Shown in pieces: positions 58,079 to 64,000 of a stretch of DNA of 64,000 nt. The notes below the pieces were generated by a model. The model was given only the letters and a program-made list of their open reading frames with translations. It was not told where the DNA came from and did no database searches. The translations under genes and the position numbers were made by a program. Numbering within the stretch: the stretch's first letter is position 1; each line of letters opens with the position of its first letter. Origin of the DNA: Saccostrea echinata (Eukaryota); assembly GCF_033153115.1 (NCBI RefSeq), contig NW_026889750.1:3534001-3598000 (forward strand). The letters are read 5' to 3'.

Positions 58079-58917
58079 GTAATTGATAGGCGTCTTTTAC
58101 CTCAGCTAATAATAAGATGCACTGTAAAGACATCAAGGTAATAACTTTTCTTTTACATTGGGTGACAGCGATTGCTTTGGGTAATATGAGATACCGCAGG
58201 TCTGCAGTTTTATGTGCATGCTGAATTATTACTTGATTTTACTCGGGTGCTGCAAGTTTATGGATAATTTTGGAGAGTTTTCTTTTATGATTCTATTATC
58301 CTACATTTTATTACATGAAACTGAGTTGGGGAAAATATTTATGAATGCCGGTAGTGTGCATTCCGATCCCGATGCATATAGGATGCATAATTTTGTCAAC
58401 CTGAGCTAATCCTTTCATAGGACTTTGTGACTTAAATATTTAAATCGTATATTTAAAGCTCTGAGAGATTATAGGGCATTAGAGATTGCCAATATTGAAC
58501 AACAAAAGAAAATGCATTGAGTATTTTTTTAAAATATGGTACTGCAGAACCATAGACATTTCATTTGCATGAAAATTTTGTAAGCCAGTTTAATCAGTAT
58601 TACTTAGAGTCATATATAAATTGTATCTTTATATCATAAATTTCATTAATAAAAAAGTTTTCTATTTTGTTGTCTAGTTAATGATTATCTATCTTCATAT
58701 ATGCTAATTTTAGTCAGAAAACGTTGCCCATATATTTTCCCACAACTAAAGGAATCCTCACCTAGAGCAAAATGAGAAGGTTCCCTTAAAACTGTGTATA
58801 AAGCACACATTTGCAAAATTTTAAGGATTTGAATCTGTGAAATACCTTTCACTTACTTGACCTAAATCTACAGAGAGGATTACAGAAAAAAGGGCGAATT
58901 AAAAAAAAATTAGGTAA

Positions 58918-60288: not shown

Positions 60289-63112
60289 ATGAAAAAATCA
60301 ATCAGTATGAAGTTAATCGAGATCTATTTGATACTTGCACTTATTGTTATCACATATTCATCTGCCATTCCTAAACCCGGTGAAGACAAGAAGAACAGAG
60401 TTCATGAACAGGTAGGCCTTTGTAAAATTGATCATGTACTTAAAGATACTTTTTCAAACAAAAAAATTATTACATTTTTTTGGTGTCATGTGCAGTTTTG
60501 ATTCAGAGAATTGAAATCAGATTTGAATATTCACCACGGTGTGAAATACATGTATTGCTAAAGGCAAATACTTCTAAAGGAGATTTAGATTTGAGTTGAT
60601 GATAAAGTATGTAAAAGAATGCAAATTTTACTGATGCTAGATTTTCTTCTTTTACAAATCTTTTGATTATATCTGGTATTAAAAGAAATAGCTGAGAAAT
60701 ATTGATGGATTTGCAAGTGTGTTTTACAGTTTATAACTGTTTAATGCTTTAGTACTTTTACTAATTCACGTTGAAGACCTAGATCAAGTAAACTAGTGAA
60801 CTGCAATATAATTTTGTTCTTGCATATTCAGATAATATTTCTGTGTTTGCTATAGATGAATACCATTGTTTGTAAAATTTTCAGAAATTGAGTGAAGCTG
60901 AGCATGAACACGAAGGTGAACACAATCCAGATTATGACCATGAAGCCTTCCTTGGCAAGGACGAGGCCAAAACGTTCGATCAGCTGACACCAGAGGAAAG
61001 CAAGGAGAGATTAGGGTAGGGGGAAAACATACGCATTGTTACAGAATCTTTATATAGATTGGTACGGTGTGGTGACCCCATAAGTTTCCCACCCATTGAT
61101 ACAACTTGAATTTATCATATGGAGTTTAAAGGGAGAGAAAACATTGATTATCAGAGATGAATAGCAATCTTTCTAATTGATAAAAAAATGTGTAAATAAG
61201 GAAATCTGTGGGTTATACAAACAGATTGCTAGTTTGTGATTCATGCAAGCATTTATTATATATATAAATGAAGTTTATGCAGTATATGAAGTGTGATCAT
61301 TAGGTAAAAACATTAAAATTAGTCACACTTTCTTTGTTAAATTCCGAATTAATTTACCACCAGATCAGATACGGATGAGATGCACATAAAGTAATTACTT
61401 GTACTGTTCCTGAGTAAGCTTATCCTGTAAAAAAAATCAAAATGAAATCAATCTTTCTTATCGTCGTGCTTTATTGCTGTAGAATTATAGTTGGGAAGAT
61501 AGACAAGGATGGAGATGGGAAGATCACAGAGCAGGAACTGAGGGATTGGATTCAGTACGTCCAGAAACGTTACATCATCACAGACACAGACAGGATGTGG
61601 AAGGACCACGATGTGGAGTCAGATAAACTCTCCTGGTCTTCTTATAAAAAGAGAACATATGGATCAGAAGATGGTAGGTGTTTACACCATATCACGTTAT
61701 GTTTATTTTATATCAACATGATGATTGTTGAGATATGCTTTAAGAATTTCATGGTTGGCTATAGAACATTAATTTACAGTGTTTAATTTTTTTACATATA
61801 CCCCCCCCTCCCCCCCCCCCCCCCCCAAAAAAAAAAGAGTCTATGAAAAGAACACACTTAAATTGAAATTTCAGTTGATACCAGGTTTATAAGAGTAGTA
61901 TTAACACTACCATAACACTTGTAATCAGTATGCATTTGAATGGGTTTTTTTCTCAACCAACAAAAATCAGGCTTCCTGATGTTGGTTCCTAGCCTTTTAT
62001 CTGTACGACATTTGAATTGATAAGAGACATCCCTTTTTTGACAGATCCTACTGATGAAGATTCCTCCACATTCAGCTACAAGGACATGATTGAGAGGGAT
62101 GAGAGGAGATGGAAGGCAGCAGATAAAGACGGGGATGGCTACCTCAATAAGGAGGAGTTTGCCGACTTCCTTCACCCTGAGGAGGCCGAACATATGAGAG
62201 ATATTGTTGTCAAGGTAATTATTTGTTTATCCTTTTTTTTTCCCCTCAGATTTATGAATATACATTTAATGTATTTTTCAGTTTGTTTTTTTTTTTTTGT
62301 TTTTTTTTTTAACAGTTTTTTTTGAGATATGTTTTGTAAGTACCGGTAATGTTGTTTAATGACGATATTTTGTGGAAAAAATCTAATAAAAGAAATTGTT
62401 TACTTTTTAAAGGAAACAATGGAGGACATTGACAAAGATAAGGATGGATTTATCAGTTTAGAAGAGTATATAGGTAAACATTTATTTTCAATTTTAATTT
62501 GAATAAATAAATTAATATTATCTAATCTTAAAAATAAAATTTTCAGTAGACGGTTTACCTTTTGGTCATTTAAGAAAAACTAGGAGAAAATTTACTTCTT
62601 GTTCACAATGTCCTGGCATTTGTTAGCTGATATTTATGACGAGGAAGATGATGACCCTGATACAGTCCAAGACGAGGAAAACCTCCATGCAGGGACCCCT
62701 GACTGGGTTCAAAGTGAGAAGGACCAGTTCATCAACCACAGGGACAAAAACATGGATGGCAAGCTGGACCAAGAGGAGGTCAAGGCCTGGGTCATCCCCG
62801 AGGATTATGACCACAGCTCGGCAGAAGCCTTGCACCTGGTTAATGCCTGCGACGATAACAAGGTGGGACATCATTTCATTATCATCCATTAATCGGAAGT
62901 TTTTGAAATTTTCAGGGGACATGTGGCCCGACAAAAATGAGGAGGAACCAGACTGGGTCAAAACTGAACGCGAAACGTTCGCTTCTCAAAGAGATAAAAA
63001 CGGAGATGGCAAAATGGATCTCGATGAAGTTAAAAATTGGATTATTCCCCCTGATTATGATCACTCTGAAGCTGAAGCTAAACACCTCATTAGCGAGTCA
63101 GATTCTAATAAG
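60289..63112 (+). CDS. CALU: CREC-family multi-EF-hand ER Ca2+-binding protein (calumenin-like), 3'-truncated; contains a duplicated alternative exon pair
   Basis: Exons 60289-60411 (signal peptide; alternative ATG 60307), 60885-61015 ([28 protein letters not shown]), 61483-61673, 62045-62214 ([15 protein letters not shown]...[15 protein letters not shown]), 62413-62473 ([20 protein letters not shown]), then 62627-62862 or 62916-63112. The last exon lies outside the window. Calumenin versus reticulocalbin assignment is not formally tested. Confidence 0.88.
62627..63112 (+). other. Tandem duplicated exon pair (A 62627-62862, B 62916-63112), probable mutually exclusive exons
   Basis: Both exons start in phase 1 and end in phase 0 (AAG|gt), encode homologous PDWV..E...F...RDKN.DGK.D..EVK.W.IP.DYDHS.AEA.HL....D.NK, and are separated by 53 nt. 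Confidence 0.85.
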
Positions 63113-63252
63113 GTGTGTACTCACTTTTGGCTCGGTTGGGGTATTATTGAAATTTATTGTGGATGTTTTTTTTTTATTATTTTTTACCTCCCTTTGATGG
63201 AGTTTGGTATTTCTCTTTTATTTATATCTCTTTTTCTAAAAACATTTACATA

Positions 63253-64000
63253 CATACCTGTCAACTCTCCCGATTTTTTCGGGAGTCTACCGATTTTGAA
63301 CCCATTCTACCGCTTGTCTACCGATATATTTTTTACCCCCAATTTCTACCGATTTTTAAGAAATCCGGAATTTTTACCGATTTCGCTTTGAATAATACCA
63401 TATTTCCTGTGAAAGAGAAGATGGCAGTTCATTGTTTATCGGTAGATACATGTTTATTGCCGCTGATAACAGGTAATCAACAAGGTGTCAACTGTGCTAT
63501 CAGTGATTACTGGGATTGTAATTGCTTCCGATTCTCATTAGCAGAGTTTAACAGAGACAGGCATGCCAGATGTGGAAATTTTAGAAATACACATTAGAAA
63601 AATGACAACGGGATACGAGGTAGTGACACTCTGCAGCAAAATATGACAATATACTAATAAACGGCTTATAAATGGAAATAAGTTTTAGAAATATGGCATT
63701 CCTTATTATAATCACGTACGAAGTTTTTAAGCATGGAAAATACACCACCAAAGCCAAAAAAGAAAAGATACGTCTGCAAGTACCTAAATTCTTGGGAAAA
63801 GGAAGCAGAATTCCAAGGTTGGCTAACAAAAAGTGTAAAAGGCGAAGATCATGCTTTCTGCAGATTGTGTATGAAAAATATAAAGATTGACCACGGTGGA
63901 AAAAATGATCTTATGAAGCATGTTTCATCAGCAGCTCATCAAAGCAGCAAAAAATCACAGAACGTCACAATGCCAATACAAAATTTCTTGACAACTTCAA
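63253..64000 (+). mobile_element. Left end of a probable autonomous hAT DNA transposon in the calumenin intron
   Basis: Terminus CATACCTGTCAACTCTCCCG followed by repeated (A/C)CCGAT subterminal motifs (63268-63382), then the transposase-like ORF. Confidence 0.68.
63733..64000 (+). CDS. N-terminus of a probable hAT transposase (TTF/BED-type zinc finger), runs off the window
   Basis: ORF from ATG 63733, absent from the supplied track because it has no stop in the window: MENTPPKPKKKRYVCKYLNSWEKEAEFQGWLTKSVKGEDHAFCRLCMKNIKIDHGGKNDLMKHVSSAAHQSSKK...; W..WL...AFCxxC...HxxxxxH pattern plus a basic NLS-like stretch. Confidence 0.75.
   Translation, partial: MENTPPKPKKKRYVCKYLNSWEKEAEFQGWLTKSVKGEDHAFCRLCMKNIKIDHGGKNDLMKHVSSAAHQSSKKSQNVTMPIQNFLTTS

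What the first reader, a model, noticed from the sequence alone, without database searches (positions are those of the whole stretch)
62627..63112. Duplicated EF-hand exon pair in the calumenin-like gene: probable mutually exclusive splicing switch
Seen: exon A (236 nt, [79 protein letters not shown]) and exon B (197 nt, [66 protein letters not shown]) are paralogous and stop-free. Both have canonical EF loops ([24 protein letters not shown]) and intact AG/GT sites. Both are phase 1 to phase 0, so including both, or neither, shifts the frame. The spacer is only 53 nt, short enough to hinder A-to-B splicing. Established: vertebrate calumenin has mutually exclusive exons at the first EF-hand. 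Here the duplicated exon covers the penultimate EF-hand and the start of the last. Inference: an independently evolved isoform switch retuning the C-terminal Ca2+-binding half of a secretory-pathway protein.
Basis: partly seen in the sequence, partly recalled or inferred. Interest (0 to 1): 0.82.

Follow-up and report, generated by a model that had tools for sequence, protein, structure and literature searches.

The report
Ancient alternative exon pair in oyster calumenin
An oyster gene for a calcium-binding protein of the secretory pathway has two tandem copies of one exon and uses one or the other, a switch already present in public gene models, shared by clams and snails, and therefore hundreds of millions of years old.

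Summary
Exon A (62627-62862, 236 nt) and exon B (62916-63112, 197 nt) are intact paralogues, 60% identical over 55 aa. Both are AG/GT-bounded and run phase 1 to phase 0, and they lie 53 nt apart. The genome is Saccostrea echinata.

RefSeq already annotates this gene with isoforms X1/X2 carrying A and X3 carrying B. None carries both. The same A/B pair is annotated in other oysters, clams, a protobranch, a unionid and many gastropods.

In a tree of the 55-residue core, all 22 A exons form one clade (98/93). Independent duplication in gastropods is rejected (p-AU 3.5e-6). B stays close to non-mollusc calumenins. The pair therefore predates the bivalve-gastropod split. It is unrelated to the vertebrate CALU pair, which covers EF-hand 1 and arose in jawed vertebrates.

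A differs from B mainly by a disordered acidic insert and an L-for-M change in the EF5 loop.

Exclusivity by frame is shown. Steric hindrance by the 53-nt intron is plausible but unproven.

I found no paper describing the pair. It is a real but ordinary kind of feature, of moderate interest. The scan had not noted it elsewhere.

The parts
58117..58137 (+). Alternative 5' exon end with an in-frame ATG (MHCKDIK), donor AAG|GTAATA. Used in RefSeq isoforms X1 and X3.
   Evidence: the N-termini of P0003 and P0092 read MHCKDIK followed by MKKSIS.
60289..60411 (+). Coding exon 1: start codon and hydrophobic signal-peptide-like N-terminus. Ends in phase 0 (CAG|GTAGGC).
   Evidence: Matches residues 1-41 of P0094.
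60885..61015 (+). Exon 2, the acidic/His-rich region. Runs phase 0 to phase 2.
   Evidence: Matches P0094/P0003.
61483..61673 (+). Exon 3: EF-hand 1 ([12 protein letters not shown]) and the degenerate EF-hand 2.
   Evidence: EF-hand_1 E 5.7e-6.
62045..62214 (+). Exon 4: EF-hand 3 ([12 protein letters not shown]).
   Evidence: EF-hand_7 E 1e-6.
62413..62473 (+). Exon 5: EF-hand 4 ([12 protein letters not shown]). Ends in phase 1 and is the common donor for exon A or exon B.
62627..62862 (+). Alternative exon 6A, 236 nt, phase 1 to 0. Encodes an acidic insert, all of EF-hand 5 ([12 protein letters not shown]), the entering helix of EF-hand 6 and the first 4 loop residues. This is the derived copy.
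   Evidence: Present in RefSeq X1/X2. AlphaFold model. Member of the A clade.
62863..62915 (+). 53-nt intron between A and B. The best branch-like motif (TTAAT) has its A 30 nt from the donor. The intron contains a TAA in the exon-A frame, 9 codons past exon A.
   Evidence: The same length and stop position are inferred in Magallana from ungapped alignments.
62916..63112 (+). Alternative exon 6B, 197 nt, phase 1 to 0. Encodes the same structural elements with a short linker and the loop [12 protein letters not shown]. This is the ancestral-like copy.
   Evidence: Present in RefSeq X3.
63113..64000 (+). Start of the 4478-nt last intron, which runs on past the window. It holds a broken hAT transposase from 63733 onward. 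The last exon (34 codons, ends HDEF, then stop) lies outside the window at G000:C1:3601591-3601695 (L002 4591-4695).

Best explanation
This is the calumenin/reticulocalbin-type (CREC family) gene of the oyster Saccostrea echinata. Its sixth coding exon exists as two tandem paralogous copies. One copy is spliced into each mRNA.

Exon 5 is joined either to A or to B, and the chosen exon is joined to the last exon. This gives a 338/345-aa A form and a 332-aa B form (325 aa in its relatives).

The swapped segment comprises the linker after EF-hand 4, all of EF-hand 5, the entering helix of EF-hand 6 and the first four loop residues of EF-hand 6.

B is the ancestral-like version. A is a derived copy that arose once, before bivalves and gastropods split. 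Its hallmarks are a disordered Asp/Glu-rich insert, Leu instead of Met at EF-loop position 8, and usually Glu in the IPxDYD linker.

Shown here: the anatomy, the frame logic, the annotated one-or-the-other isoforms, and the deep conservation of both copies.

Inferred:
- Double inclusion is prevented mainly because the 53-nt A-B intron is too short to be excised (about 55% likely). Reading-frame failure is the backstop.
- The A form has a higher capacity for, or an altered response to, calcium in the secretory pathway.
For: - Anatomy and phases.
- Paralogy: (E 3e-25). Only two tandem copies exist in the genome.
- Identity of the gene: one search gives a 100% match of exon B to 'calumenin-like isoform X3 [Saccostrea echinata]' on a contig of 53,466,550 bases, the length of G000:C1. 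Pfam EF-hand hits are, and the protein ends in HDEF.
- One-or-the-other usage in this gene: P0092 and P0094 carry A, P0003 carries B.
- Expression of both in one sample: coded runs X1-X4 hold 0.54-0.62 of the sampled words of 62380-63140. Expected shares are 0.55 for exons 5+A+B without introns, 0.32 or 0.27 for one exon only, and 1.0 for DNA.
- Both full-length isoforms of Magallana occur in transcript assemblies (Logan sources for P0009 and P0096).
- Conservation: A and B exons are found in oysters, venerids, Dreissena, Sinanodonta, Solemya and many gastropods.
- Single origin: the A clade has support 98/93. Independent gastropod duplication is rejected at p-AU 3.5e-6. Column 23 is L in 22/22 A exons against M in 27/29 B and outgroup exons.
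- Age: synonymous sites between A and B are saturated, with 60.6% nucleotide identity.
- Short-intron idea: the spacer length and in-frame stop look conserved in Magallana. Two Magallana transcript-assembly (Logan) ORFs fit a retained intron: P0099 runs through exons 1-5 and A into the intron, and P0098 is B plus the last exon. Both list a longest contig of 2268 nt.
- Structure: the acidic insert has pLDDT below 50, while EF5 and EF6 are confidently helical.
Against: - No splice junction was counted in S. echinata.
- 53 nt is not universally unspliceable. The C. elegans minimum is about 40 nt (PMC4165533), and a 56-nt human intron is a splicing model (title and abstract). The oyster minimum is unknown.
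- That P0098 and P0099 lie on one contig is inferred from equal contig length. It was not seen directly.
- Gene models that include both exons in frame through shifted donors exist in Magallana, C. angulata, Ruditapes, Mercenaria, Physella, Solemya and Elysia. Strict exclusivity may therefore not hold everywhere.
- No functional difference between the isoforms has been measured.
Confidence: 0.85

Rival explanations
1. The pair is mutually exclusive, but the 53-nt intron is spliceable. Exclusivity would come from regulated competition of the two acceptors for the exon 5 donor, plus loss of out-of-frame products, not from steric hindrance.
For: Short introns of 40-56 nt are excised in other animals. 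Both exon lengths are 3n+2, so frame alone penalises double inclusion or skipping. The intron upstream of a stylommatophoran B exon reads open for 47 codons without an A exon (P0122), so a short spacer may not be universal.
Against: The spacer length appears conserved between Saccostrea and Magallana. The best branch-like motif lies only 30 nt from the donor. The in-frame double-inclusion models of Magallana/C. angulata use a donor 14 nt further upstream, which would lengthen the intron to 67 nt if the spacer there is also 53 nt. Joining A to B at the normal sites leaves the stop in the last exon, so the exon-junction rule predicts no nonsense-mediated decay of that product.
Confidence: 0.3
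2. There are three forms, not two. A 7-EF-hand protein containing both exons in frame would be a real third isoform, made through a shifted donor.
For: In-frame A+B models exist in seven species from several pipelines: P0001, P0097, P0100, P0102, P0103, P0106, P0107.
Against: No such model is annotated for S. echinata. The two donor positions used elsewhere read GC and GA here, not GT. Ab initio predictors tend to include every coding-like exon. No read support could be checked.
Confidence: 0.08
3. One of the two exons is a decaying or rarely used pseudo-exon, and the gene effectively has one isoform.
For: No junction counts were obtained for this species.
Against: Both copies are open, keep canonical EF loops and splice sites, and are conserved across bivalves and gastropods (mean core identity 61% for A, 68% for B). 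Both are in RefSeq models. Word shares indicate both are present in the same transcript-like runs.
Confidence: 0.03
4. The duplication is an assembly artefact.
For: None found.
Against: The copies are only 60.6% identical in DNA and differ strongly in codon usage. The same pair is present in many independently assembled genomes.
Confidence: 0.01

Closest known systems
Vertebrate CALU mutually exclusive homologous exons (calumenin-1/-2; Abascal et al. 2015, PMC4494069)
   Same: Same protein family. A tandem duplicated exon encoding an EF-hand is used one-or-the-other, and both copies are conserved.
   Different: The vertebrate pair encodes EF-hand 1 and dates to jawed vertebrates. This pair encodes EF-hand 5 and the start of EF-hand 6 and arose in a mollusc ancestor. 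It is a parallel invention, not the same event.
Steric-interference exon pairs (mammalian alpha-tropomyosin exons 2/3; C. elegans egl-15, let-2, as reviewed in PMC4165533)
   Same: A very short intervening intron or donor-to-branch distance, with homologous neighbouring exons.
   Different: The C. elegans cases have 14-30 nt introns and exons of 3n length. Here the intron is 53 nt and the exons are 3n+2, so frame adds a second barrier. Unspliceability is not demonstrated here.
RefSeq isoform models of molluscan calumenin genes (e.g. XP_061174292.1, XP_061174300.1, XP_061174316.1 for S. echinata)
   Same: They are this very feature. The A and B isoforms are already annotated.
   Different: They are automatic predictions. 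In the held library no paper was found that describes the pair, its age or its mechanism.

Membership tests
CREC family (calumenin/reticulocalbin) | Multiple (six) EF-hand motifs | tested here: met
   Six loops are readable in exons 3-7; the second is degenerate. Pfam EF-hand_7 scores E 2e-26 and 1.7e-27 on P0094 and P0003.
CREC family (calumenin/reticulocalbin) | C-terminal HDEL-like retention signal | tested here: met
   The last exon ends HDEF, followed by a stop. Human calumenin ends with the same tetrapeptide (PMC12516920).
CREC family (calumenin/reticulocalbin) | N-terminal signal sequence | tested here: inconclusive
   The N-terminus is hydrophobic ([26 protein letters not shown]) and forms a helix at residues 3-25 in the model. 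No dedicated signal-peptide predictor was available.
CREC family (calumenin/reticulocalbin) | Sequence homology to named calumenins and reticulocalbins | tested here: met
   hits named calumenin, reticulocalbin-1 or reticulocalbin-3 across Metazoa, E 1e-15 to 1e-45.
Mutually exclusive homologous exon pair | Adjacent homologous exons with the same phases and splice-site type | tested here: met
Mutually exclusive homologous exon pair | Mature mRNAs carry one exon or the other | tested here: met
   At the level of gene models: RefSeq X1/X2 carry A and X3 carries B in this gene. Both Magallana isoforms occur in transcript assemblies.
Mutually exclusive homologous exon pair | Strict exclusivity: no or negligible double inclusion or double skipping | tested here: inconclusive
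   Junction counting failed. A probable retained-intron transcript and in-frame A+B models exist in other species.
Mutually exclusive homologous exon pair | Both copies maintained by selection across species | tested here: met
   dN/dS was not computed because no foreign DNA could be fetched.
Steric-hindrance type of exclusivity | Intervening intron below the species' minimal spliceable size | tested here: inconclusive
   The intron is 53 nt, and the best branch-like motif is 30 nt from the donor. The minimal intron size of oysters was not determined (one search gave nothing usable).
Vertebrate CALU exon pair (same event) | Duplicated exon encodes EF-hand 1 and is shared with jawed vertebrates | tested here: not met
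   This pair encodes EF-hand 5/6. The A clade contains only molluscs, and vertebrate sequences group with the B type.

The most novel reading that the evidence does not exclude
The Asp/Glu-rich A exon may be an innovation of shell-bearing molluscs. It would turn an ER calumenin into a high-capacity calcium-handling isoform used where calcium is trafficked for shell secretion (mantle, larval shell field). The A/B ratio would then be a regulated switch of secretory-pathway calcium buffering. The evidence neither supports nor excludes this. The acidic insert is the most constant A-specific trait, from Solemya to snails. A larval oyster proteome lists two calumenin-like isoforms that change at metamorphosis (PMC7525975), but those entries could not be mapped to A or B.
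Probability: 0.1. Interest if true: 0.65.

Novelty: new member of a known kind. Interest (0 to 1): 0.35.

Why it matters
The same calcium-binding protein family has twice, independently, evolved a one-or-the-other exon switch over an EF-hand: in jawed vertebrates at EF-hand 1, and in molluscs at EF-hands 5/6. The mollusc pair has been kept since before bivalves and gastropods diverged. That implies two non-redundant forms of a secretory-pathway calcium protein in animals that move large amounts of calcium.

It is also a compact natural test case for how short introns and reading frame together enforce exclusive exon choice outside the usual model organisms.

It does not change any general concept, and the isoforms are already in RefSeq.

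Tried and rejected
- **Foreign DNA.** No genomic or transcript DNA of other species could be read, so there is no dN/dS, no cross-species intron lengths beyond the indirect Magallana comparison, and no check of the contig inferred for P0098 and P0099.
- **Spliced model.** Full-length isoforms used were RefSeq proteins returned by the word search. Exon B was searched inside a natural stop-free frame of the window with the 'region' option. Exon pieces were joined only inside the local script, to locate stops.
- **Big HMMER search.** It was not used. The protein is not open, and that library collapses relatives at 50% identity, which would merge A and B isoforms.
- **RNA pairing.** Inverted repeats around the pair are AT-rich chance matches. 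The A-B junction region folds no better than shuffles (z +1.1). No foreign DNA was available to test conservation.
- **Literature.** Seven searches found no description of this mollusc exon pair. They also gave no oyster minimal-intron figure.
- **Solved structures.** There are no CREC structures in the PDB, only generic calmodulin and troponin C matches.
- **Earlier scan notes.** One unrelated note on this window and none on calumenin.
Full report
**1. What is in the sequence**

- Exon A is 62627-62862 (236 nt).
- Exon B is 62916-63112 (197 nt).
- Both are preceded by AG and followed by GT, and they are separated by 53 nt.
- BLASTP of one against the other gives 33/55 identities, E 3e-25.

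Reading outwards, I placed the rest of the gene by splice sites and frames.

| Exon | Window coordinates | Content |
|---|---|---|
| Coding exon 1 | 60289-60411 | Start codon, hydrophobic N-terminus |
| Exon 2 | 60885-61015 | Acidic/His-rich region |
| Exon 3 | 61483-61673 | EF-hands 1 and 2 |
| Exon 4 | 62045-62214 | EF-hand 3 |
| Exon 5 | 62413-62473 | EF-hand 4, ends in phase 1 |
| Exon 6A / 6B | 62627-62862 / 62916-63112 | Alternative pair |
| Last exon | outside the window | Ends HDEF, then stop |

The last exon lies 4.5 kb beyond the pair, at G000:C1:3601591-3601695. It starts in phase 0.

Each alternative exon runs from phase 1 to phase 0, so exactly one of them is needed. The alternatives fail as follows:

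- Skipping both gives a stop after 10 codons.
- Joining A to B at the normal sites shifts the frame for 93 codons.
- Retaining the 53-nt intron gives a stop 9 codons after exon A.

One correction to the usual assumption follows. The frame-shifted A-to-B product terminates in the last exon. By the exon-junction rule it would therefore not be a target of nonsense-mediated decay. The retained-intron form would be.

**2. Identity of the gene and the genome**

A word search with exon B, taken inside a natural open frame of the window, returned a 100% match to 'calumenin-like isoform X3 [Saccostrea echinata]'. That protein lies on a contig of 53,466,550 bases, the length of the window's contig.

The protein has the marks of the CREC family. 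It has EF-hand hits along its length and six readable loops. It ends in HDEF, like human calumenin. It has a hydrophobic N-terminus, and it has named calumenin and reticulocalbin relatives across animals.

**3. Is the pair used one-or-the-other?**

For this very gene RefSeq lists isoforms X1 (345 aa) and X2 (338 aa) with exon A only, and X3 (332 aa) with exon B only. None has both.

I could not count junctions.

Indirect evidence that both exons are expressed comes from the run index. Four coded runs of one organism hold 0.54-0.62 of the sampled 31-mers of 62380-63140. The expected shares are:

| Template | Expected share |
|---|---|
| Exons 5+A+B without introns | 0.55 |
| Same with the A-B intron retained | 0.67 |
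| Exon 5 plus A only | 0.32 |
| Exon 5 plus B only | 0.27 |
| Genomic DNA | 1.0 |

The sampling error is about 0.06.

In Magallana, both full-length isoforms occur as exact ORFs in transcript assemblies (P0009 and P0096 carry Logan as a source).

**4. How old is it?**

The same pair is annotated or recoverable in many molluscs:

- Oysters: S. cucullata, Ostrea edulis, Crassostrea virginica, Magallana gigas, C. angulata.
- Other bivalves: Ruditapes, Mercenaria, Dreissena, Sinanodonta, Solemya.
- Gastropods: Physella, Biomphalaria, Lymnaea, Aplysia, two Elysia species, Candidula, Littorina, Batillaria.

I cut the indel-free 55-residue core (from PDW to the exon end) out of 22 A exons, 18 B exons and 11 non-mollusc sequences. 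The variable acidic region was left out.

- All A exons form one clade with support 98/93.
- B exons are not separable from annelid, arthropod, amphioxus and vertebrate sequences.
- Forcing gastropod A and B exons together costs 45 log-likelihood units, p-AU 3.5e-6. The group was named as the obvious rival hypothesis, but after the free tree had been seen.
- Column 23, EF-loop position 8, is Leu in 22/22 A exons against Met in 27/29 others.
- Within S. echinata the two cores share 60.6% of nucleotides, and only 15 of 33 identical residues use the same codon.

The duplication therefore happened once, before bivalves and gastropods diverged. B keeps the ancestral sequence and A is the derived copy. 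Both have stayed open and conserved since: mean bivalve-gastropod core identity is 61% for A and 68% for B.

Whether cephalopods, chitons or other phyla have an A exon is not known. Only a B-type Octopus protein turned up. The word search is not sensitive enough to claim absence.

**5. What the switch changes**

An AlphaFold model of the A isoform, built on an alignment of 38 relatives, has mean pLDDT 76.7. Exon A corresponds to residues 226-304:

- a linker with pLDDT below 50 at residues 236-247, which is the acidic insert;
- the helix-loop-helix of EF-hand 5 (helices 251-264 and 274-281);
- the IPEDYDH linker;
- the entering helix of EF-hand 6 (289-300);
- the first four loop residues of EF-hand 6.

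Both versions keep all canonical calcium ligands. A differs by a 13-residue-longer Asp/Glu-rich linker (much longer poly-Asp in clams), by Leu for Met in the loop, and by Glu in the inter-hand linker. A functional difference in calcium capacity or partner binding is a reasonable inference, but it is untested.

**6. How exclusivity is enforced**

Frame incompatibility is shown (section 1).

Steric hindrance is plausible. The intron is 53 nt, by far the shortest in the gene; the others are 153-4478 nt. The best branch-like motif is 30 nt from the donor.

Two ungapped alignments indicate that the spacer length and its in-frame stop are the same in Magallana.

Two Logan ORFs fit a transcript spliced everywhere except at the A-B intron. 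P0099 covers exons 1-5 and A and reads into the intron. P0098 covers B plus the last exon. Both list a longest contig of 2268 nt. I could not open the contig to confirm this.

Against this mechanism, introns of 40-56 nt are excised in other animals, and the oyster minimum is unknown. I put steric hindrance at about 55%.

I found no sign of competing RNA pairing, but conservation could not be tested.

**7. Double-inclusion models**

Several gene models in other molluscs include both exons in frame through shifted donors.

- In Magallana and C. angulata the donor is 14 nt inside exon A.
- In Ruditapes, Mercenaria, Physella, Solemya and Elysia marginata the donor is 4 nt downstream of the A donor, which gives a Val-Gly bridge.

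In S. echinata those positions read GC and GA, and no such isoform is annotated. These models may be artefacts of gene predictors or rare real forms. I could not check reads.

**8. Comparison with what is known**

The vertebrate CALU pair encodes EF-hand 1 and originated in jawed vertebrates (PMC4494069). The mollusc pair is at a different exon and arose in a different lineage, so it is a parallel invention in the same family.

Tandem-duplicated, mutually exclusive exons with short spacers and non-3n lengths are a well-known class (PMC4165533).

I found no paper in the held library that describes this pair. The isoforms themselves are in RefSeq.

**9. Verdict**

This is a further, anciently conserved member of a known kind of feature. 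It is already present in automatic annotation but apparently undescribed in the literature.

Interest is moderate, at 0.35.

- The large HMMER search was deliberately not run.

Noticed in passing
window 62698-62862 versus 62948-63112: The two homologous exon cores have very different codon usage. GC at third positions is 0.745 in A and 0.327 in B, while the other exons of the gene lie at 0.35-0.57. This could reflect different exonic splicing signals. It is unexplained.
   Followed up: partly
window 63733-64000 and beyond (L002 733-3508): A broken hAT-type transposase lies in the last intron of the calumenin gene. It shows a weak BED zinc finger and a clear hAT dimerisation domain (E 5.8e-13), and the ORF is split into at least five pieces.
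   Followed up: partly
window 58117-58137: An upstream 5' exon with its own in-frame ATG adds MHCKDIK in front of the signal-peptide-like N-terminus in RefSeq isoforms X1 and X3. Its effect on ER targeting is unknown.
   Followed up: partly
window 62849-62868 (end of exon A and its donor): Gene models of other molluscs join A and B in frame through a donor 14 nt inside A (Magallana, C. angulata) or 4 nt downstream of the A donor (Ruditapes, Mercenaria, Physella, Solemya, Elysia marginata). The recurring Val-Gly bridge implies a conserved GTNGGT at the A donor in those species. S. echinata has GTGGGA there and TGC at the internal site.
   Followed up: partly
Proteins P0098 and P0099 (Magallana transcript assembly): A probable mRNA spliced at all introns except the A-B spacer. 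One ORF runs through exon A into the intron and stops. A second ORF starts in exon B and ends at HDEF. Both list a 2268-nt contig.
   Followed up: partly
G000:C22:4118782-4118958 (minus strand): A distant paralogue of this exon (41% identity, E 2e-4) occurs as a single copy, presumably in another CREC gene without the duplication.
   Followed up: no
window 62268-62321: A T-rich intron stretch tripped the reads tool's filter. Nothing else is notable there, and it was left alone afterwards.
   Followed up: no
window 62853-62855: Exon A of most oysters has a Cys just before the EF-hand 6 loop (NACD). It is absent from C. virginica, clams and gastropods. A lone lumenal cysteine could matter for disulfide exchange. 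This was not examined.
   Followed up: no
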